Positions 4,464 through 58,261 of a stretch of DNA of 64,000 nt are shown piece after piece. The stretch comes from Octopus sinensis (Eukaryota). The stretch covers positions 42,532,001 to 42,596,000 of the forward strand of contig NC_043009.1 of NCBI RefSeq assembly GCF_006345805.1, written 5' to 3'. A program made the translations under genes and the position numbers. Every line of letters begins with the position of its first letter. Position 1 is the stretch's first letter. The notes beneath the pieces were generated by a model. That model was not told where the DNA came from. It saw only the letters and a program-made list of their open reading frames with translations, and ran no database searches.

Positions 4464-4769
4464 CCATGCTTTATTGATAAAGCTGCAAAGACATCACAAA
4501 AACTGTTACTCAGAGTTTCACGTTCCTGTTCGTCGGACAGTTTTGGTTGAAAATGGAACAAAAAATAAGGTTGTTCCATTCTCAACCCAAACTGTCCAAT
4601 GAACAGGGACGTGAAACTCTGAGTAACAGTTTTTGTGATGTCTTTGCAGCTTTATTGATAAAGCATATTACTCTACCTCTGGTATTCACGTACTATTTTT
4701 CCCACCTTGTTTCACATTTATGTGCTTAATCTAGTATATATACTCACATATATATGCATGTATATATAT

Positions 4770-4986
4770 ACTCTTTTACTCTTTACTCTTTTACTTGTTT
4801 CAGTCCTTTGACTGCGGCCATGCTGGAGCACAGCCTTTAGTCGAGCAAGTCGACCCCGGGACTTATTCTTTGTAAGCCCAGTACTTATTCTATCGGTCTC
4901 TTTTGCCGAACCGCTAATTGACGGGGACGTAAGCACACCAGCATCGGTTGTCAAGCAATGCTAGGGGGACAAACACGGACACACAA

Positions 4987-5018
<32 letters not shown>

Positions 5019-5190
5019 TCATATATACGACAGGCTTCTTTCAGTTTCCGTCTACCAAGTCCATTCACAAGGCATTGGTCAGCCCGGGGCTATAGCAGTA
5101 GACACTTGCCCAAGGTGCCATGCAGTGGGACTGAACCCGGAACCATGTGGTTAGTTAGCAAGCTACTTACCACAGAGCCACTCCTGTGCC
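4770..5190 (-). mobile_element. tRNA-derived SINE type B with internal (TA)/(TG) microsatellite
   Basis: Head GGAGTGGCTCTGTGGTAAG..GGTTCAGTCCC, body ..GAAAGAAGCCTGTCG-(microsatellite)-GTGTTTGTCCCC.., tail (GTAAAAGA)n. Confidence 0.88.
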
Positions 5191-8436: not shown

Positions 8437-8501
<65 letters not shown>

Positions 8502-8543
8502 ATTATTTTATTATTATTATTATTATTATCATCATTATTATTA

Positions 8544-8583
<40 letters not shown>

Positions 8584-8600
8584 GATTTTATTATTATTAT

Positions 8601-8822
8601 ATTCAGTAGTTTTATTTTATAGTGTGCTTTCACTTCACTACCGAGCACAGCTCTGTGTGCCTTGGGTATGTGCTGTGATTTGTTGTGATGCTCTGATGGT
8701 TATTGTATGGAAAGTGTTCTGCGTAGGATGTGTGCAGTGCCTAGTAGTGCAATTTTCTGTATGTTATATGTGTTTGTAAGTCCTGGTGTTTTTGTTATGT
8801 ATTTGTCTGAATATTTTTTTTT
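8601..8822 (-). mobile_element. 5'-truncated Dong-type copy (3' end of ORF plus 3' UTR), young
   Basis: Reverse complement matches about 56410-56632 with only about five differences counted by eye. It sits inside (TTA)n arrays. Confidence 0.9.
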
Positions 8823-8883
8823 TTAATTATTATTATTATTATTATTATAATTTTTATCATCATCATCATAATCATCATCATCA

Positions 8884-8916
<33 letters not shown>

Positions 8917-8926
8917 TATCATTATT

Positions 8927-9343
8927 ATTCAGTAGTCTTATTTTTATAATGTGCTTTCACTGCACTACCGAGCGCAGTTCTGTGTGCCTTGGGTATGTGC
9001 TGTGGTTTGTTATGATGCTCTTATTTTTACTGTATTGAAAGTGTTTTACGTAGGATGTGTGCGGTTCCTAGAAGTGCTATTTTCTGTATGTTATATATAC
9101 TTGTTAGTCCTGGTGTTTTTGTTATATATTTGTCTGATTACATTTTTATCATATCCAATACACCTACTATGATAGGAATTGTTTCTGCTTTTAGACTTCA
9201 CATTTGAGTTACCTCTATTTCCAGATCCTTGTATTTTGAAAGTTTTTCCGTTTCTTTTAGAGAGACATTGTCATCTTTTGGTATTGATACATCGATTAGA
9301 AAGTTTTTTTTTTTCTTGGCGATTTCTGACAACTATATCCGGC
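8927..9343 (-). mobile_element. 5'-truncated Dong-type copy, more diverged subfamily
   Basis: Minus strand encodes RPDIVVRN..FLIDVSIPKDDNVSLKETEKLSKYKDLE and carries a similar 3' UTR ending ACTGAATAAT. Flanked by TTA/CAT arrays. Confidence 0.85.
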
Positions 9344-16060: not shown

Positions 16061-16566
16061 ATATATATATATCTTAATTAGCCCTATTCACGATATCATA
16101 AGTACTATTCTTTTTCTAGACGTATTGGTAATTCCAGTTTTATTTTAGTACTAGCTTCATTTCACTACTATTTACACACCTTGGTTCCCTTTGTATAGAA
16201 ATAATCCATAAATATTTCCTTAGATCACTGATAGTTCATTCCTTTACCAATCGACTTCAAGCTCCAGGTTTGCAAGACTCTAACTTATTGAGCCTTCTGG
16301 CCTCATCTCGAGGCCCAGTTCTTTCCTCTTTACTCCACCCTTCGTTTATTTTATTACATGCACTTATATTCACTCTATGTGCTATGAAGACGACGAATAT
16401 TATTTTCGGAATTTCTTTCGGAAGCACCGACTCACATTGGGGGCGGAAACGGCTGTAAGAAATGTTATGTCACGTTTTGTATTAAAAAGTAATCGACTGA
16501 TGTTGGTCAATTTGTTTCTTTGTTAAAAGTTTTCTCCATTTTCTGATGATATATATATATATAGTT

Positions 16567-17003
16567 GCAGGCGTGGCTGTGTGGAAAGAAGCTTGCTTTA
16601 CAATCTCATGGTTTCGGGTTCAGTCCCACTGTGCGACATCTTGGGTAAGTGTCTTCTACTGTATCCTCAGCCGACCAAAACCTTGTGTGTGGATATGGTA
16701 GATGGAAACTGAAAGAAGCCTGTCGTATATATATATATATATATAGTATTTATTTATATATTTATGTGTGTGTCTTTGTTTCTGTGTTTGGTCCCTCCCA
16801 CCATCACTTGACATCCGATGTTGGTATGTTTATATCTCTATAACTTAGCAGTTTGTTAAAAAGAGACTGATACAATAAGTACTAGGCTTACAAAGAATAA
16901 TCCCTGGAGTCGATTTCTACGACTAAAATACGCCTTAAGGTGTTGGTACTCCAGCATGGTTACAGTTAAATGACTGAAACAAGTAGAAGAATAAAAGAAT
17001 AAA
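16567..17003 (+). mobile_element. SINE type B
   Basis: Same architecture; abuts the Tc1 left TIR. Confidence 0.8.
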
Positions 17004-17011
17004 GGACTATA

Positions 17012-18277
17012 CAGAGGTTGAATAAAATAATGGAATTACCTAGCATCATAGCATCATAATTTTGAAATATCTATAAAACCATCAAAAGCTTGTTTATTTT
17101 TGTTTTTTTTAATTTATTATTAGTGTTGCTTAATATGTTTTGCTAAAATTGCTGTTTCTTTTCAGATATCATCAGAAAAGGTAATTAAATTCATTAAAAT
17201 GACAGATCTATCAAAATTTCAAAGAGGTCAATTTGTTGGTGCTCGAATGTCAGGCACTAGCGTAATGAAAACAGCTGAAATGTTTGGTATATCAAGTACG
17301 GTCTCGAAAGTAATGACAGCCTTTGAGAAAGAGGGAAACACCTCCTCACCCAAACAAAACTCCGGAAGAAAACCAAAACTTTCAGATAGGGACCATCGGA
17401 CTCTTACGCGAATTGTTAGAAAGGATCACAAAAGTACAGCTCTTAAAATTACTGCAGAACTTAATGACCACCTCGAGAATCCAGTTTCCACAAAAACTGT
17501 TCACCAGGAGCCATACAAAGCTTGATTTCACAGAAAGGCTGCAATCAGAAAACCACTGTTTTCAAAAACAAACATTGCAAAGCGTTTAGATTGGAGTAAA
17601 ACCAACAGAATTGGTCCCTAGAGAAGTGGGAGGATGTTATTTTCTCGCACGGGTCTTCTTTTACCTTATTTCCAACCACCGGCCAAGTATACGTATGGAG
17701 ACAGCCAAAAGAAGCATTTGTCCCAGACTGCCTTCTTCCGACTGTTAAACATGGAGGAGGATTTGTGATGATCTGGGGAGCTGCATCTTGGAATCTGCCA
17801 GCCCAATGGTTTCCCTTCGTGGCAGAATTAATCATCAAGACTATTTAAGCATTTTATCTGATCAAATTCATCCAATGATTGCAGGAATGTTTCTGGAGGG
17901 AAACGCAATTTTTCAGGATGATAATGCATCAATTTACACAGCTAAAGTTGTTACTGAATGGCACGAGGAACATTTTAGTGAAGTTGAACCTCTTATCTGG
18001 CCACCACAGTCCCCAGATCTCAATATTATTGAACATTTATGGTGCATTTTAGAAAATCAAGTAAGGAGTCGATATCCTCTACCATCATCACTACATGACT
18101 GGAGATTGTTTTAGCTGAAGAATGGACAAAAATTCCTTTGGAAACAATTCAAACTTTGTACGAGTCCATACCTCATAGAATTCACGCTGTAATTACTGCC
18201 AAAGGCAGTCCTAATCCATATTAAAATAAAATTTGTTTGAAATTTTAAGGTGTTTCTATTATTTTGTCCAACCCCTG
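17012..18277 (+). mobile_element. Tc1-superfamily DNA transposon, full length but pseudogenised (DD36E spacing)
   Basis: About 30-bp imperfect TIRs (CAGAGGTTGAATAAAATAAT.. / ..ATTATTTTGTCCAACCCCTG) with TA target sites. Transposase fragments: HTH with GRKPKLS, TVKHGGG, FQDDNA, WPPQSPDLNIIEHLW. Stop at 17523-17525 and frameshifts. Confidence 0.92.
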
Positions 18278-25363: not shown

Positions 25364-26301
25364 ATCAACAATATTGAAGACACATATACAAAGTATGTGT
25401 TTTGCCAGTTCATGGCGAGACTGTGATTATAGGTGTAAGAGAATATGTTCTCATCATTTCCCTTGATGCTAAAACACCTGGAAGACATGTTTACAAATGC
25501 ATATAGATAGCTATATACATATATAAACTACATTTTAATCAGAGCTTATTATACTGTGTTCATATATTTATATACCTTTATGTATCAAATCCAATAATGC
25601 ATGCATGCATGCACACACACTCCCACACACAAACATTTACATATATATGAATATATGTATATGGGCACAGGAGTGGCTGTGTGGTAAGTAGCTTGCTTAC
25701 AAACCACATAGTTCTGTGTTAGGTCCCAATGAGTGGCACCTTGGACAAGTGTCTTGTCAGTGGATTTGGTAGACAGAAAACTGAAAGAAGCCTATCGTAT
25801 ATATGTGAATGTGTATGTGTGTGTATGTTTATGTGTCTGTGTTTGTCCCCCACCATTGCTTGACAACCGACAGAATAAGTACTAGGCTTACAAAGAATAA
25901 GTCATGGGGTCAATTAGATTGACTTAAGGCAGTACTCCAGCATGGCCATAGTCAAATGACTGAAACAAGTAAAAGAATATGTGTGTGTGAGTATATATAT
26001 ACGCACACACATATTTATATCAATGTGTATATGTATATGCATATTATATATGCCTTTATATTGTGTTTGATATACAGATGTTATGCGTATTTCTTGAAAC
26101 TGTATATAATCATTTATAAATTAGATATAAAAACTGAAATTATGCATATCAAATGGTATTTAAATTCAATAATAGGGAATGAATATATACAATTATCCTA
26201 TCAATATTTGCATATATTATAATATATTATATGTTTATATACATACAATCAGGTTACATACATACATCTATAAAGATATATATGTATGTATATATATTTA
26301 A

Positions 26302-26519
26302 CCCTTTAGCATTCAGATTATTCTGTAAAATGTAAAGCTTATGTATTCACACCATGTAAAATTAATCCTGCATCATTTCATGACTGAGATTTCAATGATG
26401 TGATTGTTTATTTTTAAAATGACACAATGAGGTAGCTATGAATGACCATATCTGACTAGTTTGAACATAAAATAGGTAAAATATTTTGGCCGGATATGGC
26501 CGGTTTAAACACTAAAGGG
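26302..26519. mobile_element. TTAA-flanked (piggyBac-type) MITE
   Basis: TTAA|CCCTTTAG...CTAAAGGG terminal inverted repeats; the right TTAA is mutated. No coding capacity. Confidence 0.7.
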
Positions 26520-29267: not shown

Positions 29268-30128
29268 TGTATGTATGTATATAACCACACAAACACACAG
29301 AGATATGTATATATATTTATGCACATTGTGTATTTGGTTTTTTTTTTTTTTTGCTTTGTTTACTTTTAGCATATTTCGCATAAACCCTTACTAAGGGCAT
29401 ATTTAGCACAAATAAACTCTTTGGTAAAGACAAATTTAGCTGAAAAATGCAAAATCTAAAAATTATTTACAGCAATAAATAAATTATTTGTTGTATTATT
29501 TTAAATGATTTGTTACACAATTAATTAGATATGTAGTATTTTAACAAGAAAAATATTTCTTGCAGGAAAACACATTAAATGAGTGTAGTAGTGTGTGCAT
29601 GTGTTTATGTGCATGTGTGTGTGTGTCTGTATGTATATGTGTGCATGTGTGAAAGTGTTTAAAATGTTTCCTTGTCTTTTCCTATATCCTACTCTATAAC
29701 AGCTACCCACATGTACACTCTCTCACAAAGCATTCAGCAAATGCAGGCAGACAGACACACAGAATATAACCATAGTTTATCAATGTCATTAAGGTAAACA
29801 AATTGAATATCCAGTCTAGAAAAAGTGCCATGCAGTGCACTAAATATAAAGTATCAAAATTTTAAACACAGACATTATTATATTGAAAGCACTTCAATGA
29901 AATTTCCAATTAGAACCAGATGTTTATGCATCAGTTTATGCATAAAATATGTATATACACACACATGCACACACACACACACACACGTATATATATATGT
30001 GTGTCTGTGTGTGTGTGTGTGCATATATATATATATATATGTATACAAGGATATGTTGTAAGAAAGCTTGCTTTGCAACCATGTAGTTTTGGGTGCAGTC
30101 TCACTGCACAGCATCTTGGGCAAGTGCA

Positions 30129-31625
30129 TTTGCCGGAATTTACCGGAATTTGCCGAGATTTACCGGAAATTGAAGGAATTTGCCGAAGACTACCGGAATT
30201 TTTCACAAAGATTGCCGGAGATTACTGGAGTTTACCAGAGATAGCAGGAGATTGACCCCAAAATTTTGAAAACTTTTTAGGGAATATTTTGAAAACTTTT
30301 TGGGAAAATTTCAAAAATTTTTGGGAAAATTTTCAAAAATTTTGGGGAATAATTTTCAAAAATTTTTGAGAAAAATTCTCAAAAACTTTTGGGATAAATT
30401 CTGAAAAATTTTTGGGAAAAATTTTCAAAAAGTTTTAGGAAAAATTTTGAAAAAGTTTTGGGAGAAATTTTGAAAAATCTTTGGGAGAAATTTTGAAAAA
30501 TTTTTGGGAAAAATTTTGAAAATTTTTGATGAAAAGTTTTCGAAAGTTTTTGGTGAAAATTTTGAAAAATTTTGGGGAAAATTTTCAAAAATTTTTGGGG
30601 AAAAAATTCCAAAAACATTTGGGAAAAATTTTCAAAACTTTTTGATGAAAAATTTTCAAAAATTTTTGTGGAAAAATCTTCAAAACTTCATGGTGAAAAT
30701 TTTCAAAAATTTTTAGGCAAAATTTTCAAAAATTGTTGAGAAAAATTTCAAAAACTTTTGAGGGAAATATTCAAAAATGTTTGGGAAAGATTTTCAAAAA
30801 TTTTTGAGAACAATTTTCAATAATTTTGGGGTAAAAAATTTCAAATATTTTTGGGGAAAATTTTCAAAAACTTTAGGGGAAAAAATTTCAAAAATTATTG
30901 GGGAAAATTTTCAAAAAATTTTCTAAAAATGTTTTAGGAAATTTTCAAAAATTTTTGCGAAAAGTTTTTGAGGAAAATTTTCAAAAACTTTTGGGGAAAA
31001 TTTTCAAAAAACTTTTGGGAAAATTTTGAAAAATTTTGGGGAAAAATTTTCCAAAACATTTTGTAAAAATGATTGCCGGAGATTCTCGGAAATTGCCGGA
31101 ATTTGCCGGAGATTGCCGGACATTGCCGCAGTTTTCCGAAAATTGCCGGAGCTTGTTGGAATTTACCGGAATTTGCCGGAATTTACCAGAATTCAACGGA
31201 ATTTACCGGAGTTTGCCGGAATTTGGCGGACATACCGGAATATGCTGGAAATTGCCGGAAATTGCCGGAGATTGCCGGAGATTACCGGAGTTTATCGGAG
31301 ATTGCCGGAGTTTGTCGGAATTTGCCGAAGATTACCGGAATTTGCCGGAATTTGCCGGAGATCACCGGAATTTGACAGTATTTGCCGGAGATTACTGGAG
31401 ATTGCCGGAGATTACCGAAGTTTGCCGGAGATTACCGGAAATATTCGGAGTTTGCCGGAATTTGCCGGAGGTTACCGGAGATTACCGGAGATTGCCGGAG
31501 AATGCCGGGGTTTGCCGGAGATTGCCGGAATTTGTCGGAGATTCTGGAGTTTGCCGGAGATACCCGGAGTTTGCCGGAGATTACCGGAGTTTGGGGAAGA
31601 CTTTCAAAAATTTTTAGGGAAAATG
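30129..31625. repeat. Two-component 10-bp-periodic minisatellite (TTGCCGGAAT-type and AAAATTTT-type blocks)
   Basis: Block A 30129-30255, block B 30259-31069, block A 31071-31590, short block B 31591-31625. Confidence 0.95.
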
Positions 31626-31694
31626 CCCATGCACAAACACGCAGAACTCATATATATATAGATAGGTAGATAGTTAGCTACATTGATAGATAGA

Positions 31695-31726
<32 letters not shown>

Positions 31727-32346
31727 TAGATAGATATATAGGTAGATAGATAGATTGATTGATTGAAAAAGGTGTGTATGTATATTTCTGCTTTTGTTGT
31801 CCCCACATACCCTTGACAATGTATGTATCTGTAATTTAGTGGTTCAGCAAACGAAACCACTAGAATAAGTACCAAACTTGTAAAAAATTATAAAGTACTA
31901 GGATCGTTTTATTGGAAATGCTTCAGAGCAGAGCTCCAGCATGGTAATAGTCCTATGACTGAAAGAAATAAAAGATAGAAAAAATATCTTTGAATTGTTC
32001 CAACACATACTACATTTATATTAAATTTATTTCACAGTCTCTGTTGAACTTTTTCATCCTTTGAAGTTGATTTAAAATATTAATTTTCTTTTGCAGAGAA
32101 ATCAACATTTTTAATATTTGAAAGATGATTTAGCCTGTTTAAAGATAATATTATCTAAAGAATATGCACCAGTTTTGGGTGCTTCACTATTGAAGACATG
32201 TTATGAAAACCAAAAGAGTCATGTCTCTGTATGTATAAAGTAAAAGAAATATAAAACTTCAACCAAAATCAAAGCCATAATAAAGAGAAAATCTGCAAAC
32301 TGGGTACCACATAAACAGATAGAAACCATTTTATGTGCATATCTAT

Positions 32347-32510
32347 AGGCGTAGGAGTGCCTGTGTGGTAAATAGCTTGTGTAAGTACTACATGGTTCCG
32401 GGTTCAGTCCCACTGCGTGGAACCTTGGGCAAGTGTCTTATACGATAGCCTCAGGCCAACCAAAGCCTTGTGAGTGAATTTGGTAGACAGAAACTGAAAG
32501 AAGCCCATCG

Positions 32511-32549
<39 letters not shown>

Positions 32550-32780
32550 TTGTATGTGTGTGTGTATATATGTTTGTGTGTCTGTATTTGTCACGCCAAC
32601 ATCGCTTGATAACTGATGGTGGTGTGTTTACGACCCCGTAACTTATCGGTTCGGCGAAAGAGACCGATAGGCTAAGTACTAGGCTTACAAAGAATAAGTC
32701 CTGGGGTTGATGTGCTTGATTAAATGCGGTGCTCCAGCATGGCCACAGTCAAATGACTGAAGCAAGTAAAAGAGTAAAAA
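32347..32780 (+). mobile_element. SINE type B
   Basis: Same architecture; followed by the PLE-type element. Confidence 0.85.
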
Positions 32781-32782
32781 AT

Positions 32783-32813
<31 letters not shown>

Positions 32814-32823
32814 ATATATACAT

Positions 32824-33035
32824 TCAAAATGTGACCGCGTGTGTACCGTTGGCGATTTTTTCCTCGGTCTTCCCTTCTTTGGATCTTTCCTTTTCCTATG
32901 TTTCTGATGAAGAGTTCTGGTCGAAACGTTAAACCCTCTTTCTTTCCTTCTTTCCTGAGCATCCAATAATACTATACTTGTTCCACGTCCTCGCGTTGTT
33001 GTGTTTTCTCTTTGTGTTTTCATGTTTGGATTAAC
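32824..33035 (+). mobile_element. Short non-coding Penelope-type element carrying a hammerhead motif
   Basis: Pyrimidine-rich about 210-bp element between (TA)n tracts, containing GTTT-CTGATGA-AGAGTTCTGGTC-GAAACGTT-AAAC. Confidence 0.55.
32900..32934 (+). ncRNA. Minimal hammerhead ribozyme motif with degenerate stem II
   Basis: Stem I GTTT/AAAC; core CTGATGA; GAAA; helix III palindrome AACGTT. Stem II has only about 2 clean pairs. Confidence 0.55.
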
Positions 33036-40884: not shown

Positions 40885-42090
40885 CTCACAGGCACATAAA
40901 TATATATATATTTATACATAAATATATATACATACACTCGCACATAAATATATATATATATACATATTTGTACAATATATATATAAGAAGTTTGCTTCTG
41001 AACCACATGGGTCTGAGTTCAGTCCCACTGTGTAGCAGCTTGGGCAAATGACCTTTACTATAGCTCCAGGTCGACCAAAGCCTTGTATATAGATTTGGTA
41101 GATGGCAACTGAAAGAAGTTCATCATATGTATGTATGTTTGTATGTAAATATGTTTGTGTCTTTATGTCTGTGTTTGTTCCCCACCACCACTTGATAACC
41201 AGTATTGGTTTGTTTGCGTCCTTATGACTCAGTGTTTTGACAAAAAAAAAAGTGGCCAATAGAATAAGTAACAGGTTTTAAAAAAGAATGAGTATCAGAG
41301 CTGATTTGCTTGCTCATACTCTCAAAGGTGGTACCCCAGCATGACTGCAGTCCAATGACCAAAACAAGGAAAAAGCAAAATGTACATACACCCACACATA
41401 TGTCTAATGCTGAAGGAAGAATATTCTATACCATTGTAGGCATTTACATTTAATAATGTTTATATTTTGGATGAGTCTGTCTCTTGCTACTCAGGAATAT
41501 TAGAGTTTGCCTGTGCACTCAACATGTTCATTAGGCAAGTTAGAGCTATTACGATGTGATCTAAGAGAGACTTGGCTGCTATTTCTAGTATATCAAGTGA
41601 TCCCATAGAGGTACCCTTATTAGTTTGGATAGTTTTGTAACATATATTTCTTTAACAAAAAGATCTCATAACAGAATTTGAACTGAATATAAATTTTACT
41701 GAATGATTTCATAGGTTAGACGACAAACGTAAAATAACAGCTTCTCTCTACTAAATATGGTGTGCATAACATTAATAAATGCTGTGGAGAATGGACGGGG
41801 TAAATTTGGAATTCTATAGCCATTATTTACGACTCACCTTTCAGGGTGGTAATCAGTGAACTTAAGCAATGTCTTTTTTTAACTTTACCCCCTGGGAATC
41901 TCATCTTTAAGCACCAGTATTTCTCTCCAAGTATTATTGCTTGTCATGAAATACATTCAACAACTAACATAAACATATTACTAAAATATTCCCTCTGGGA
42001 TCCTACCCACCCATTTTTTTTACGAGTGATGTAAATACATATATACATACATACATAGTACACACGTATATATGTATGTGTGCATGTATT

Positions 42091-52706: not shown

Positions 52707-55700
52707 GGACACCGGGGACGTTTAAGATGTAAGAAGGAAAATACAGAGCTCCGAAATCTATCCACAAACATCGAAAACAAGGACACCCTATGGAGCCAAA
52801 GATTTACTAACAAAGAATTGGACTATATCCGAGTAAGTAATACTAATTGAAATTTATTACTATTTCCGAAACGAAATGATGTATTTTGACTCGATATTAT
52901 CTCCACCTCTAACACAACACATGTAAACATGCGTGGAACAACACGATCATCCCCGACCTCAAACACCATGTACAAAGGAACTACGAAGAAATTAAATGCC
53001 ACCGATACTATTCAACCCAAGAATAACAATCGAGCGGTACGTACATTAAACCTACAACAAAAAATGTGCGAAAAACTACACGTGCGAAATAATGTGACAA
53101 CAGAAATAAACGGACCGGTACCCTACGAAAATGACGACCGTCAAAATAATGGGCCGGACGTTGTACCTCATGTCCCGCAATTAAAACCCAAAAGACGTAA
53201 ATGGACACGTGAGGAATACATTTCTATCTTACACGCATACTTCACAGCAATGCTCTACCCACAAAATGAAAATACAACAACACATACATATAAAATATTG
53301 AAGGAAAATAATAGAGATATAGACTTGGATACAGCAATGAACCCTAATAAATTAGCTAACGTACGAAGATACATTCTCAAAGCCAAACAAATATCAGAAA
53401 TAGAAATAGAACATTTAAAAGAAAAAATACACCAGGAAAATGTAGATAGAAGCCACACAACAATGCCCAATAATATAAACACTGAAACTGTAAAACACGA
53501 AGACAAACGCAACATTCCCAACAAACACGATGTAAACAACGAAGGGGAGCCTAAAGATTATGATAATATAAAAAATAAAATAATCAAAGAACTGAAAACC
53601 ACAGAGCCCAAAATGGACCACCGACCATACCTCCCAAGAATAAAAATAAACGCAATAACAACACCAATTATAAACAACATAAACCTAGCCGTCACTGAAC
53701 TAGCCACTGAAACAAAAAAAGTGATATCACTGAACTAATGACTTGATATACGCAGCAGCCACTGCAGCCACAAAAGAAACTGGATACTCACCCAAACCCG
53801 CCCAAACAGGAGTACCACCACCCAAACAAACCCTGTGGATAAATAACATCCAAAACAAAATTAAAAAAATTAGAAAAGACCTGTCGATTCTTAATGAAAT
53901 CAGCAAACAAGCAACGCTACTAAGCAACAAAAAGAGAACAAAAATGCTCCGCAAATATAACATCACAGAAAAAGATTTGCCGGAGATAAAAGAAAAGCTG
54001 AAGCAAGATATCCTTGCCAAAGCTCAAAGGATCCGCCGGTACGAGAAACGCCAACGCTTCTTTGAACAGAACAAAAAGTTCAACTCCGACCCCAAAAAGT
54101 TCTACCAAGAACTGGGCAAAAATAAAATAGAAGTCACTGCAGCACCAACGGCAGAAGAATTGGAAGAATTCTGGAGAGAAATATGGTCGGCGAACGAACA
54201 GCCAAAAAAAAGGAGTATGAAAATAACAAACTCGGCATCTGAACAACTTGGACCCCCATAACAACTGAAGAGGTCACCCAGGCACTGCAAAAACTAAGCA
54301 ACTGGAAGGCACCTGGGCATGACAAGATCCCCAACTTCTGGTTGAAATATCTAACAGGAATGCACAAAAAGCTGGCTGAAAACTTTAACAGCATACTAGC
54401 AGAGCCAGAGACAATGCCTGAATGGCTCACGAAGGGGAAAACCATCTTAATTCCCAAATCAAATGAAACAACAAAACCAGAAAACTACAGACCAATAACC
54501 TGCCTCCCTACTATGTTCAAGCCACCTGGACGAAAACAAACTGTTCCCAGAAGAGCAGAAAGGATGCCGCAAGGGCTCATATGGCTGTAAAGATCAACTA
54601 ATGATTAATAAAGCCGTAACTGAAGACAGCCACAGAAAGAAGAAAGGCCTCAGTATGGCCTGGATTGACTACAAAAAGGCGTTTGATAGCATCCCCCACA
54701 CATGGATCCTCGAAACACTAGCCATTAACAAAGTAGCACCAACAATCATAAAATTCATAGAGCACTCTATGAATAAATGGCAAACAGTCCTACACCTCCA
54801 AACAAAAGAGGGACTCATGAAAACCAAAGACATCCCCATTAGAAGAGGAATATTCCAGGGAGACACGCTCTCTCCACTCCTTTTCTGCTTGGCACTGTCA
54901 CCTCTATCTGATATGCTAAATAGAACTGGATGCGGATATAAATGTTACGGCAAAACGATCAGCCACCTTTTATATATGGATGACCTAAAACTATACGCTG
55001 CAAATGACAAACAGCTAGAAACACTATTAAAGACAGTTCATAGATTTACCAAAGAAATAGATATGAAATTTGGATTAGAAAAATGCGCCAAAGTAACCAT
55101 GAAAAGAGGAAAACTAGTTAAGAGTAACAACATCACACTAGATAAAACCAATGAAATAAAAGAATTAGACCAAAGCCAAACTTACAAATACTTAGGAATC
55201 CATGAACTAGATAAGACACAACACACACAAATGAAAGAGAAAATAAAAAAGAATATTATAGACGAGTTAGATCAATACTAAAAACAGAGCTCAATGCTAA
55301 AAACAAGATAATAGGTATCAACACTTTAGCTGTCCCAGTTATAAGTTACAGCTACAATATCCTTAACTGGACACGAAATGAACTGTCCAAAATAAATAGG
55401 AAAACAAGAAAAATACTGACAGGATCTAGGATGCATCACCCAAAATCTGACATAGAAAGACTATATATACAACGTATAGAAGGTGGTAGAAGCCTTATAC
55501 AGCTGGAAAACTACTATAAAATAACCACCATACGACTGCAAAAATACCTACTTCAGAAGGAAGGAAAACTGATCCAGATAGCAGCAAAACACGAGCAAAA
55601 CAAAAAACTGTTCTCAGTATTTAAGGAAGCTGACAAATACAAACAAGAAATCATACCACCTAATAAACACAAAGAAGAAGAAGAAGATGATGAAGAAACA

Positions 55701-56626
55701 ACAAAAGCTATAAAACAAATGAAATCCAAACTAAAAATAGAACAGCAACGAGCCATGATAAAACGATGGCAAGAAAACCCCTTCATGGTAAATACTGCAC
55801 TAAACTAAACGCAAAAGAAATAGACAAAGAAAAATCCCAGCAATGGTTGAGAAGCTCAGGACTCAAAGCAGAAACAGAGGGATTTTTAATTGCAGCACAA
55901 GACCAAAGCCTCCCCACCAGAAATTACAAAAACATGTAATGAAAAGAAATATTACAAGTAACTGCAGAATATGTGGAGATGGACAAGAAACAATAAATCA
56001 TATTATCTCTAGCTGCCCAGTCCTGGCTAAGAAGAAATATATACACAGACATGACAGAGTTGGAACCTACATACATTGGAAGCTATGCCAACATTATGGA
56101 ATAACAACAGAAAAAAGATGGTATAGGCACACACCAGAAAAGGTCACAGAAAATGAGAAAGCAACCATACTCTGGGATATGCCGATACACACAGATAGAG
56201 AAATTAAGGCCAACAGACCAGATATAGTTGTCAGAGATCATGAAGAAAAATAATGCTTTCTAATTGATGTATCAATACCGGCAGATGACAACGTGTCTCT
56301 AAAAGAAATGGAGAAACTCTCAAAATACAAAGACCTGGAAATAGAGATAGCTAGAATGTGGAACCTGAAAACAGAAACAATTCCTATCATAGTAGGTGCA
56401 TTAGGCATGATAAAAAAATATTCAGACAAATATATAACAAAAACACCAGGACTTACAAACACATATAACATACAGAAAATTGCACTACTAGGCACTGCAC
56501 ACATCCTACGCAGAACACTTTCCATACAATAACCATCAGAGCATCACAACAAATCACAGCACATACCCAAGGCACACAGAGATGCGCTCGGTAGTGAAGT
56601 GAAAGCACGCTATAAAAATAAAACTA

Positions 56627-57275: not shown

Positions 57276-57381
57276 CTTATGATGATGGACTCCCCCGTCG
57301 ACGATGATGTGTGGGCGTTCAGCTTTTTGCCGAACGATTTGCACAAGTGATTTGTTTATAGTGTTCAAATGTTTGTGACAC

Positions 57382-57775
57382 ACTTTACTCTTTTACTCTT
57401 TTACTTGTTTCAGTCATTTGACTGCGGCCATGCTGGAGCACCGCCTTTAGTCGAGCAAATCGACCCCAGGACTTATTCTATTCTTTGTAAGCCCAGTACT
57501 TATTCTATCGGTCTCTTTTGCCGAACCGCTATGTGACGGGGACGTAAACACACCAGCATCGGTTGTCAAGCAATGCTAGGGGGACAAACACAGACACACA
57601 CACACATATATATATACATATATACGACAGGCTTCTTTCAGTTTCCGTCTACCAAATCCACTCACAAGGCATTGGTCGGCCCGGGGCTATAGCAGAAGAC
57701 ACTTGCCCAAGATGCCACGCAGTGGAACTGAACCCGGAACCATGTGGTTGGTTAGCAAGCTACTTACCACACAAG
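57382..57775 (-). mobile_element. SINE type B, well preserved
   Basis: Close match to 4770-5190. Further partial or diverged copies lie at about 25667-25978, 30056-30126, 36840-37048, 38597-39015, 40985-41372, 43675-43825, 44105-44245, 45510-45710 and 61612-61745. Confidence 0.88.
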
Positions 57776-58261
57776 CTCACTTTATCCTTAAAATTGACGT
57801 TGTCTGAACAGGTGCACGGTGTACCACACGTCAGGTGTTGAAGTGATCGCATTGCAACGTGAGATGAAGTGTTTTGCTCAAGAACACAATACACTACCCG
57901 ACCTAGGAATTGAAACTACGATCTCACGATTGCGAGTGCAACACCCTAAACAATAGGCCATGCGCCCTCAAGATGATAATAATGATAGAATAAATAAAAA
58001 AAGTAAAGTTACCTTCTCCAGCCATTACTGGTTCGTAAGAGCCAGTTTCCCGATTTCATGGCGTATGTATTCTCCACCAGGATAGGACACCGGTCCGTCG
58101 CAGGATTACTCACTTTTGCCAGCTGAGTGGACTGGAACAATGTGAAATGAAGTGTTTTGTTTAAGAACATGAGTCATCCGGTCCAGGAATCGAAACCACA
58201 ATCTTACAATCATGGAACCAATGTCCTAACCACTCAGCAATGCGCTTCCACGATAATAATG

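What the first reader, a model, noticed from the sequence alone, without database searches (positions are those of the whole stretch)
30124..31634. Two-alphabet 10-bp-periodic array (CCGG-rich blocks alternating with phased A/T-tract blocks)
Seen: an A-B-A-B layout. A units (TTGCCGGAAT/TTACCGGAGA) place AA/TT and CCGG in antiphase every 10 bp and form a dense CpG/CCGG island in CpG-poor DNA. B units (GAAAATTTTC/AAAAATTTTTGG) are quasi-palindromic A4-5/T4-5 tracts at about helical period. The array interrupts a type-B SINE right after its head and is bracketed by GTGCAT (30124) and ATGCAC (31629). Established: 10-bp AA/TT with antiphase GC favours nucleosome wrapping; phased A-tracts bend DNA; nematode PATC sequences and Helitron/Foldback internal minisatellites have similar periodicity. 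Inference: a mobile or amplifying chromatin-architectural module (positioned nucleosomes beside a curved or nucleosome-poor segment) that no standard feature class here explains.
Basis: partly seen in the sequence, partly recalled or inferred. Interest (0 to 1): 0.75.

Follow-up and report, generated by a model that had tools for sequence, protein, structure and literature searches.

The report
Two-part minisatellite inside an old SINE
This is a real 1.5-kb compound tandem repeat, a 10-bp CCGG-rich array alternating with a 23-bp A/T-tract array, that lies inside an old, decayed SINE copy; it is an ordinary class of sequence, with no sign here of mobility or a dedicated chromatin role.

Summary
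The A-B-A-B layout is real. A1 (30127-30259) has about 13 degenerate 10-bp units. B1 (30260-31062) has about 35 units of 23 bp (GGGGAAAATTTTCAAAAATTTTT). A2 (31063-31593) has about 53 units of [G/A][A/T]TT[G/A]CCGGA. B2 (31594-31625) has about 1.4 B units. A2 has a strict 10.0-bp period and, with A1, holds 40 of the window's 89 CCGG sites.

B is not "about helical period". Its period is 23 bp (half-period 11.5), and it has essentially no AA/TT power at 10.0-10.7 bp.

The GTGCAT/ATGCAC bracket is at chance level: 5.9% of random site pairs show a 6-bp inverted repeat. The array replaces about 70 bp of a SINE copy that is 75-79% identical to consensus and keeps 1 of 11 consensus CpGs. A2 keeps a CpG in about 46 of 53 units, so it is much younger than its host.

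There is no other A or B copy and no inverted partner in the 64 kb. No HINE, foldback or MITE termini are present.

The same 10-bp unit occurs in marine-eukaryote contigs, where one dispersed foldback-like family carries it. It also occurs in unrelated bacteria and in a viral contig, so shared ancestry is not shown.

Verdict: a compound minisatellite evolving by local slippage and unequal exchange. Its units happen to match the classical nucleosome-positioning and A-tract motifs. It is a new member of a known kind, of modest interest.

The parts
30049..30126 (+). Head of the host SINE (consensus positions 6-82), ending ...CTTGGGCAAGTG
   Evidence: Alignment to the consensus of six other copies in the window: 79% identity, 0 of 2 consensus CpGs kept.
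30124..30129 (.). GTGCAT, the left half of the 6-bp inverted bracket. GTG belongs to the SINE; CAT runs into the first A unit (CATTTGCCGGA).
   Evidence: Read directly. An inverted 6-mer at such edges occurs in 5.9% of random site pairs.
30127..30259 (+). A1: about 13 degenerate 10-bp units (ATTTGCCGGA / ATTTACCGGA / GATTACTGGA ...)
   Evidence: TRF period 10/20. Unit segmentation gives a mean edit distance of 2.8 per 10 bp. It has 7 CpG and 5 CCGG.
30260..31062 (+). B1: about 35 units of 23 bp, consensus GGGGAAAATTTTCAAAAATTTTT (two palindromic A/T tracts plus a G run)
   Evidence: TRF period 23, 34.8 copies, 78% matches. Segmentation. FFT peaks at 11.5-11.6 and 23. R5Y5 probe gives 103/116 at period 11.5. 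ssDNA folding z = -7.9.
31063..31593 (+). A2: about 53 units of 10 bp, [G/A][A/T]TT[G/A]CCGGA; CCGG/CpG-dense; three phase slips
   Evidence: TRF period 10, 52.5 copies. Per-position composition. 35 CCGG, 46 CpG, CpG o/e 1.49. FFT peak at 10.02. R5Y5 probe gives 102/116 at period 10.0. ssDNA folding z = -7.6.
31594..31625 (+). B2: about 1.4 B units (GGGGAAGACTTTCAAAAATTTTTAGGGAAAATG)
   Evidence: Match to the B pattern at 31596-31617. The A-to-B junction aligns with the A1-to-B1 junction, and the A unit is broken at the same phase (after xxTTG) in both.
31626..31649 (+). Unassigned 24 bp (CCCATGCACAAACACGCAGAACTC), including ATGCAC at 31629-31634
   Evidence: No significant similarity to the missing SINE segment (p about 0.86).
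31650..31763 (+). (GATA)n microsatellite at the position of the SINE's internal microsatellite zone
   Evidence: TRF period 4, 28.5 copies. Alignment to the SINE consensus.
31775..31983 (+). Tail of the same SINE copy
   Evidence: 75% identity to consensus, 1 of 9 consensus CpGs kept.

Best explanation
The feature is a compound minisatellite: two unrelated short-unit tandem arrays side by side. One has a 10-bp CCGG-containing unit and the other a 23-bp unit made of two palindromic A/T tracts.

It lies inside an old tRNA-type SINE copy in repeat-rich, apparently non-coding DNA. My recollection of the SINE suggests an octopus-like genome, but I did not verify this.

After the SINE inserted, a seed carrying an A-to-B junction arose or was captured at the cost of about 70 bp of SINE body. 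The seed was duplicated once, giving A-B-A-B. The blocks then grew and decayed independently by replication slippage and unequal exchange:
- A1 is short and decayed.
- B1 expanded to about 35 units.
- A2 expanded or was homogenised most recently.
- B2 stayed at about 1.4 units.

The sequence has no dedicated function. Its physical properties are by-products of the units:
- A2 is a strict 10.0-bp R5Y5 / (A/T)3NN(G/C)3NN array, predicted to give strong rotational nucleosome positioning.
- B is an 11.5-bp-phased A4-5T4-5 array, predicted to follow a superhelical rather than a planar curve.
- Both are dyad-symmetric and prone to hairpin or cruciform formation.

Shown: the anatomy, the periods, the position in the SINE, the relative ages, and the absence of transposon termini. 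Inferred: the slippage and exchange mechanism, the duplication of the junction, and the chromatin behaviour.
For: - Head-to-tail units with variant repeats at three polymorphic positions and a conserved core are typical of minisatellites.
- The blocks differ in degeneracy: A2 shows about 7% change at core positions, B1 about 4.1 edits per 23 bp, and A1 2.8 edits per 10 bp. This fits independent turnover rather than one imported block decaying uniformly.
- The host SINE is 75-79% identical to consensus and keeps 1 of 11 consensus CpGs. SINE copies at 93-97% identity keep 12-15 of 16. A2 keeps a CpG in about 46 of 53 units, so its expansion is far younger than the host.
- The array contains 57 runs of four or more T on the SINE strand. 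Pol III terminates at such runs, so the array cannot have been retrotransposed as part of the SINE and must post-date it (plus established Pol III termination).
- Both A-to-B junctions break the A unit at the same phase and align at about 73%.
- There is no other copy or inverted partner in 64 kb.
- The bracket is at chance level.
- No Rfam family, tRNA or real coding signal is present. The 193-211-aa ORFs are artefacts of a stop-free 10-bp unit.
- Identical 10-bp units arise independently in bacteria and in a viral contig.
Against: - I could not search the source genome, so copy number is unknown. A multi-copy element with constant ends is not excluded.
- About 70 bp of SINE is missing, which simple in-situ slippage does not explain.
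- A family of dispersed elements in marine-eukaryote contigs carries the same unit. Some show A-array/spacer alternation and a B-like motif next to the array. This hints that A and B may travel together.
- CpG sites in A2 are not more mutated than the neighbouring C/G positions. This could mean protection from methylation rather than youth.
Confidence: 0.68

Rival explanations
1. The block is a copy or one-armed remnant of a non-autonomous mobile element whose body is made of short tandem repeats. Candidates are foldback-like elements, tandem-repeat-containing MITEs, Helentron/HINE-like elements, or a re-integrated rolling-circle/eccDNA concatemer of an [A about 530 bp - B about 800 bp] unit. 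On this reading it inserted into the SINE with a 70-bp deletion.
For: - The edges inside the SINE are sharp and SINE sequence is lost.
- The layout partial-A / full-B / full-A / partial-B is what a 1.1-unit excerpt of a longer (A-B)n periodic donor would look like.
- Marine-metagenome contigs L001 and L008-L012 carry GATTGCCGGA arrays inside a dispersed element lying in different introns. That element has a leader of reverse-complement units about 70% complementary to the array and a shared trailer.
- L008 alternates A arrays with spacers ending GGCAAAAATTTCAAAAAATTGCCGG. L014 has a TTACCGG array followed by A5T10..A5T7.
- Mollusc HINEs and MITEs that carry internal tandem repeats are documented (PMC7492417, PMC3879986).
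Against: - There is no leader, trailer or subTIR, no 3' palindrome module and no target-site duplication. There are no inverted A units anywhere in 64 kb.
- Outside the 10-bp unit itself, similarity to the metagenome family is only at E about 1.
- The same unit also occurs in unrelated bacteria and a viral contig, so unit identity can be coincidence.
- The very different ages of A1 and A2 do not fit a single imported block.
Confidence: 0.22
2. One reading: the block is a selected chromatin-architectural module, with positioned nucleosomes on A next to a curved or nucleosome-poor B. It would act as a boundary, a phasing element or an unmethylated CpG island.
For: - A2 scores 102/116 on an R5Y5 probe at 10.0 bp and B1 scores 103/116 at 11.5 bp. 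Both are extreme outliers; the 99.9th percentile elsewhere is 77-79.
- The B unit equals the GRAAATTTYC and AAAAATTTTT motifs of PMC3097165.
- CpG is retained in A2 within CpG-poor DNA.
Against: - Conservation, a second copy and an associated gene or promoter could not be shown here.
- The periods are 10.0 and 11.5 bp, not the 10.2-10.5 bp expected for optimal wrapping or planar bending. Scores at 10.4 bp fall to 82 and 78.
- A1 is decaying freely.
- The array lies in a dead SINE among microsatellites and a LINE fragment.
- Any tandem repeat with a 10-bp unit shows 10-bp phasing by construction.
Confidence: 0.05
3. The array is an assembly artefact or contamination.
For: Long low-complexity arrays are error-prone in assemblies, and their length may be wrong.
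Against: - The array is flanked on both sides by the two halves of one SINE copy of the host genome's own family.
- The units are individually mutated rather than identical.
Confidence: 0.03
4. The A array is a transcription-factor landing pad: an array of ETS-type CCGGAA cores or another CCGG-reading factor.
For: A2 contains 12 CCGGAA and 21 CCGGAG. GGAA-core arrays are known to recruit ETS-family proteins (my own knowledge).
Against: - There is no CCGGAAGT optimum; the count is 0.
- There is no nearby gene or promoter evidence.
- I did not test this further.
Confidence: 0.02

Closest known systems
Compound or interrupted minisatellites (variant-repeat minisatellites)
   Same: Head-to-tail units of 10-23 bp, interspersed variant repeats, blocks of different unit type abutting one another, and growth by slippage and unequal exchange.
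   Different: Both unit types are dyad-symmetric and match nucleosome or curvature motifs. The array lies inside a SINE and has replaced part of it.
Trifonov-type 'strong nucleosome' sequences and their tight clusters: 10-11-bp tandem repeats of R5Y5, (GRAAATTTYC)n, (AAAAATTTTT)n. Motifs are from PMC3097165; the cluster papers are from my own knowledge.
   Same: GGAGATTGCC matches R5Y5 at 9 of 10 positions. The B unit is GAAAATTTTC + AAAAATTTTT. Both give extreme R5Y5 probe scores.
   Different: The periods are 10.0 and 11.5 bp rather than about 10.4. No chromatin data exist for this locus. The described clusters are mostly centromeric or heterochromatic in plants, nematodes and mammals.
Non-autonomous Helentrons (HINE/DINE-1) and tandem-repeat-containing MITEs of molluscs (PMC7492417, PMC3879986, PMC4067079)
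   Same: Short satellite-like arrays dispersed in a mollusc genome, with a microsatellite next to the array.
   Different: There are no left or right modules, no 11-12-bp subTIRs and no 3' palindrome. The known units are about 100-170 bp, not 10 or 23 bp.
Foldback elements (arms built of 10-, 20- and 31-bp tandem repeats in Drosophila FB; my own knowledge), and the foldback-like family seen here in Tara Oceans contigs (L001, L008-L012)
   Same: 10-bp unit arrays with 20/30-bp higher-order variants. The metagenome family has an identical unit, GATTGCCGGA.
   Different: The window copy has no inverted arm. Homology beyond the unit is not shown.
C. elegans PATC (periodic An/Tn clusters)
   Same: Phased A/T runs over hundreds of bp in non-coding DNA.
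   Different: PATC are loosely 10-bp phased and are not a strict tandem repeat. B is a strict 23-bp unit with 11.5-bp phasing.

Membership tests
Minisatellite / compound tandem repeat | Head-to-tail copies of a 10-100-bp unit, many copies, far above chance | tested here: met
   TRF: A2 period 10 x 52.5 copies, B1 period 23 x 34.8 copies. Motif counts are 33 and 26 against about 0 expected.
Minisatellite / compound tandem repeat | Variant repeats interspersed along the array, with degeneracy differing between blocks (local turnover) | tested here: met
   Positions 1, 2 and 5 are polymorphic and the core TT.CCGGA is conserved. Edit distances are A2 2.0, A1 2.8 and B1 4.1 per 23 bp.
Helentron non-autonomous element (HINE) | 5' and 3' subterminal inverted repeats of 11-12 bp in left and right flanking modules (PMC7492417) | tested here: not met
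   The only inverted repeat at the edges is 6 bp, which is at chance level (5.9%). The array abuts SINE sequence within 10 bp or less on the left.
Helentron non-autonomous element (HINE) | Short palindrome or stem-loop in a conserved right module of about 60 bp; insertion at TT; no target-site duplication | tested here: not met
   No conserved right module exists. The 24 bp after B2 show only a 3-bp GGG...CCC stem. The junctions are G|CATTT and ...ATG|CCC, not TT.
Foldback element | Two long inverted arms made of short tandem repeats | tested here: not met
   All 33 A matches are on the + strand and there is no reverse-complement A unit in 64 kb. By contrast, the metagenome family has a leader about 70% complementary to its array.
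MITE / TIR DNA transposon | Terminal inverted repeats plus a target-site duplication of a superfamily-specific length | tested here: not met
   The 6-bp inverted repeat is not significant. The only flanking direct repeat is AA or the palindromic TGCA. About 70 bp of the target is deleted rather than duplicated.
Dispersed (multi-copy) repeat | Further copies elsewhere in the same genome with the same ends | not testable with these tools
   No eukaryotic genome collection is available. There is no further copy in the 64-kb window. Artefact-ORF searches found only foreign contigs.
Strong-nucleosome (R5Y5, about 10.4 bp) sequence | High match of about 115 bp to the R5Y5 / GRAAATTTYC periodic probe | tested here: inconclusive
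   Scores are 102/116 (A2) at period 10.0 and 103/116 (B1) at period 11.5, but only 82 and 78 at 10.4. The window mean is about 65 with sd 3-5. No nucleosome data are available.
Intrinsically curved phased A-tract DNA | A-tracts repeated in phase with the helical repeat (10-10.6 bp) | tested here: not met
   In B1 the AA/TT power is 0.0-0.2 at 10.0-10.7 bp against 5.1-7.1 at 11.5-11.6 bp.
CpG island (Gardiner-Garden/Frommer criteria) | At least 200 bp, G+C at least 50%, CpG o/e at least 0.6 | tested here: inconclusive
   A2 is 531 bp, G+C 49.9%, o/e 1.49. It is formally borderline, and the CpGs all come from one repeated CCGG. Methylation state is not testable here.
Part of the SINE as retrotransposed | The sequence can be transcribed through by Pol III | tested here: not met
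   The array has 57 runs of T4 or more on the SINE strand. Six other SINE copies lack it.

The most novel reading that the evidence does not exclude
A and B together are the cargo of a widespread, undescribed family of foldback-like non-autonomous elements of marine invertebrates. Its arms are 10-bp (A/T)3NN(G/C)3NN arrays with adjacent A/T-tract palindromes. Such elements would be mobile carriers that seed strongly nucleosome-positioning, CpG-retaining DNA into introns and repeats. The octopus-like locus would be a one-armed derivative in which the A/T-tract spacer expanded into a 35-unit array.
Probability: 0.08. Interest if true: 0.6.

Novelty: new member of a known kind. Interest (0 to 1): 0.3.

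Why it matters
If it is only a compound minisatellite, it matters little. It would be a likely length-polymorphic marker, a local CpG/CCGG cluster that could mislead CpG-island or HpaII-based analyses, and a natural sequence with near-ideal 10.0-bp rotational phasing that could serve as a nucleosome-positioning test substrate.

It would matter more if genome-wide searches show that A and B travel together with fixed ends. That would link transposition to the spread of DNA with extreme nucleosome affinity in cephalopod genomes, whose repeat biology is under active study.

Tried and rejected
- Coding: the 193-211-aa ORFs across A2 are artefacts of a stop-free 10-bp unit (30 bp gives the decapeptide LPEIAGDCRR in all frames). 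Their database 'homologues' are translations of other 10-bp minisatellites.
- Known RNA or tRNA: nothing reached Rfam gathering scores and ARAGORN found nothing.
- An exact scan of JGI metagenomes with a 2-unit A pattern gave only 2-4-unit hits in high-GC bacteria, which are irrelevant.
- The B-unit exact pattern gave no hit in viral contigs, and a B-derived ORF gave no protein hit.
- Literature search by sequence strings for the A unit, B unit and SINE gave nothing relevant. The recent Octopus vulgaris repeat paper does not mention such arrays.
- In-situ birth of the A unit from the missing SINE segment: the best local match is CGGAAATTGAAGGAA against CGGAAACTGAAAGAA, at p about 0.03 before correction for six tests. 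This is not convincing.
- Paralogy of the two A-to-B junctions: they align at about 73% with the same unit phase, but a junction 50-mer matches inside B1 better than it matches the other junction, so this is only suggestive.
- Higher-order repeat in A2 or B1 beyond 10/20 and 23 bp: none found.
- Identifying the organism through a LINE RT fragment: the best NCBI hit is 74% identical, from assembly GCA_024449705.1, with no name returned. The octopus assignment rests only on my recollection of the SINE.
- Looking up the window's own ORF in the contig index: not on record.

Full report
**What is there**

The window is AT-rich (35% G+C, CpG o/e 0.58) and crowded with microsatellites.

Between 30127 and 31625 lie four abutting tandem-repeat blocks:
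- A1, 30127-30259: about 13 degenerate 10-bp units.
- B1, 30260-31062: about 35 units of 23 bp, consensus GGGGAAAATTTTCAAAAATTTTT.
- A2, 31063-31593: about 53 units of 10 bp.
- B2, 31594-31625: about 1.4 B units.

The A unit is [G/A][A/T]TT[G/A]CCGGA. It has three polymorphic positions and an almost invariant TT.CCGGA core.

Both motifs are confined to this interval and to the + strand. There are 33 and 26 matches where about 0 are expected. The array holds 40 of the window's 89 CCGG sites. A2 has CpG o/e 1.49 against 0.57 for the rest.

**Periodicity**

A2 has a sharp spectral peak at 10.02 bp, with TT/AT and CC/CG/GG in antiphase.

B1 is not 10-bp periodic. Its peaks are at 11.5-11.6 and 23 bp, and AA/TT power at 10.0-10.7 bp is essentially nil.

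With a 116-nt R5Y5 probe, A2 reaches 102 matches at period 10.0 and B1 reaches 103 at period 11.5. The window mean is about 66 (sd 4-5) and the 99.9th percentile is 77-79. At 10.4 bp the scores fall to 82 and 78.

A matches the classical (A/T)3NN(G/C)3NN pattern. B is literally GAAAATTTTC + AAAAATTTTT, the nucleosome-pattern motifs of PMC3097165. However, B is off the helical phase, which predicts a superhelical rather than a planar curve (inference).

Both blocks are strongly self-complementary as single strands, with z = -7.9 and -7.6. This follows from their palindromic cores.

**Context**

The array sits in a copy of a roughly 400-bp SINE that occurs at least seven times in the window.
- The head (30049-30126) ends at consensus position 82.
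- The tail resumes after a (GATA)n tract, at 31775-31983.
- About 70 bp of SINE body is missing.

The host copy is old: 75-79% identical to consensus, with 1 of 11 consensus CpGs left. Copies at 93-97% identity keep 12-15 of 16. A2 keeps a CpG in about 46 of 53 units, so its present form is far younger than its host. A1 is intermediate.

The array carries 57 runs of T4 or more on the SINE strand, so it cannot have been part of a Pol III-transcribed SINE. It therefore arose or arrived after the SINE inserted.

**Mobility**

The GTGCAT/ATGCAC bracket exists, but a 6-bp inverted repeat is found at 5.9% of random site pairs. These hexamers are also twice as common here as base composition predicts.

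There is no target-site duplication, no flanking module and no reverse-complement A unit in 64 kb. The defining features of HINEs (subTIRs, 3' palindrome, TT target; PMC7492417), of foldback elements and of MITEs are therefore not met.

**Relatives elsewhere**

No eukaryotic genome collection was available. I therefore used the artefact ORF across A2 as bait. It retrieves translations of other 10-bp minisatellites.

Contigs L001 and L008-L012 come from two marine metagenome assemblies, one of them from Tara Oceans (PRJEB4352). They carry GATTGCCGGA arrays inside a dispersed element that lies in different introns. The element has a leader of reverse-complement units about 70% complementary to the array and a shared trailer. 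In L008 the A arrays alternate with spacers that end in a B-like GGCAAAAATTTCAAAAAATTGCCGG. L014 has a TTACCGG array followed by A5T10..A5T7.

This is suggestive, but similarity to the window outside the 10-bp unit is only at E about 1. The same unit (GTTTGCCGGA or GCTTGCCGGA, at least 5 copies) also occurs in unrelated bacteria and in a 394-kb viral contig. Unit identity alone therefore does not show common descent.

**Interpretation**

The best reading (about 0.68) is a compound minisatellite that evolves locally by slippage and unequal exchange. An A-to-B junction was duplicated once: both junctions break the A unit at the same phase. The blocks then expanded and decayed independently. The origin of the seed is open. 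It could be filler DNA captured during repair of a break in the SINE, a fragment of a repeat-bearing element, or in-situ birth.

A mobile-element origin is the main rival (about 0.22). A selected chromatin module is possible but unsupported (about 0.05).

The feature is a new member of a known kind. It is notable mainly for how cleanly its two units embody the textbook nucleosome and A-tract motifs.

Noticed in passing
L001:1350-1975; L008:360-1160; L009:290-690; L010:770-1320; L011:2060-3334; L012:1330-1850: A dispersed, foldback-like non-autonomous element in contigs from two marine metagenome assemblies (ERZ908233, a Tara Oceans assembly, and ERZ27287341). It has a leader of about 250 bp made of roughly 60-bp repeats holding reverse-complement units (..AGTCTCCGGTAAGTGCCGGCA..). 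This is followed by a GATTGCCGGA array of variable length (over 900 bp with a 30-bp higher-order repeat in L011) and a conserved trailer (..GTGTTTGCCGGAATTAYTGACACTT.ATGACCAGTATG). It lies in introns of different genes (a calmodulin-like gene in L001 and an LRR gene in L010). The host organism is unknown.
   Followed up: partly
L014:120-300: A 10-bp xxTTACCGGx array of about 17 units, followed directly by A5TAT10CACA5T7C4. This is an A-then-B-like arrangement in an unrelated metagenome sample (ERZ2272404).
   Followed up: no
L016:7861-7905; L017:1190-1400; L018:4854-4898; L019:3279-3323; L020:1736-1770: The same 10-bp unit (GTTTGCCGGA, GCTTGCCGGA or GTTTACCGGA) repeated 5 to about 20 times in unrelated bacteria (an Alphaproteobacteria MAG, a Spirochaetaceae MAG, Bacillus sp., Pedobacter steynii) and in a 394-kb IMG/VR contig. 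I did not establish whether this recurrence exceeds chance among 10-bp repeats.
   Followed up: no
L013:1-300 and 560-730: Another compound minisatellite in a metagenome contig: an AATTTACCTG array abutting a GGTTCACTTG array, followed by 8-bp CTGTAGAC / CTGTACA arrays.
   Followed up: no
window 4700-5190(-), 16565-17060, 25665-26160, 32350-32840, 40965-41460, 57300-57785(-): Six further copies of the same roughly 400-bp SINE, at 79-97% identity to their consensus. Retention of consensus CpGs falls with age, from 15 of 16 at 97% identity to 2 of 16 at 79%. This indicates strong CpG decay in this DNA.
   Followed up: partly
window 52929-56253 (+): A degraded non-LTR retrotransposon. The ORF at 54601-55281 hits RVT_1 (E = 2.9e-23) and the ORF at 55843-56253 hits zf-RVT. 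The CpG-richer stretch at 53-64 kb coincides with it.
   Followed up: partly
window 8482-9137: A 327-bp unit present twice (83% matches), itself built of (TAT)n and (ATC)n microsatellites.
   Followed up: no
window 30120-30135: The left junction GGCAAGTG|CATTTGCC is a 16-bp near-perfect palindrome with one G-T mismatch. It is formed by the end of the SINE head and the first A unit.
   Followed up: no
window 26486-26505: GGCCGGATATGGCCGG: two CCGG sites 10 bp apart, the only other 10-bp-spaced CCGG pair within 25 kb of the array. It does not match the A unit.
   Followed up: yes
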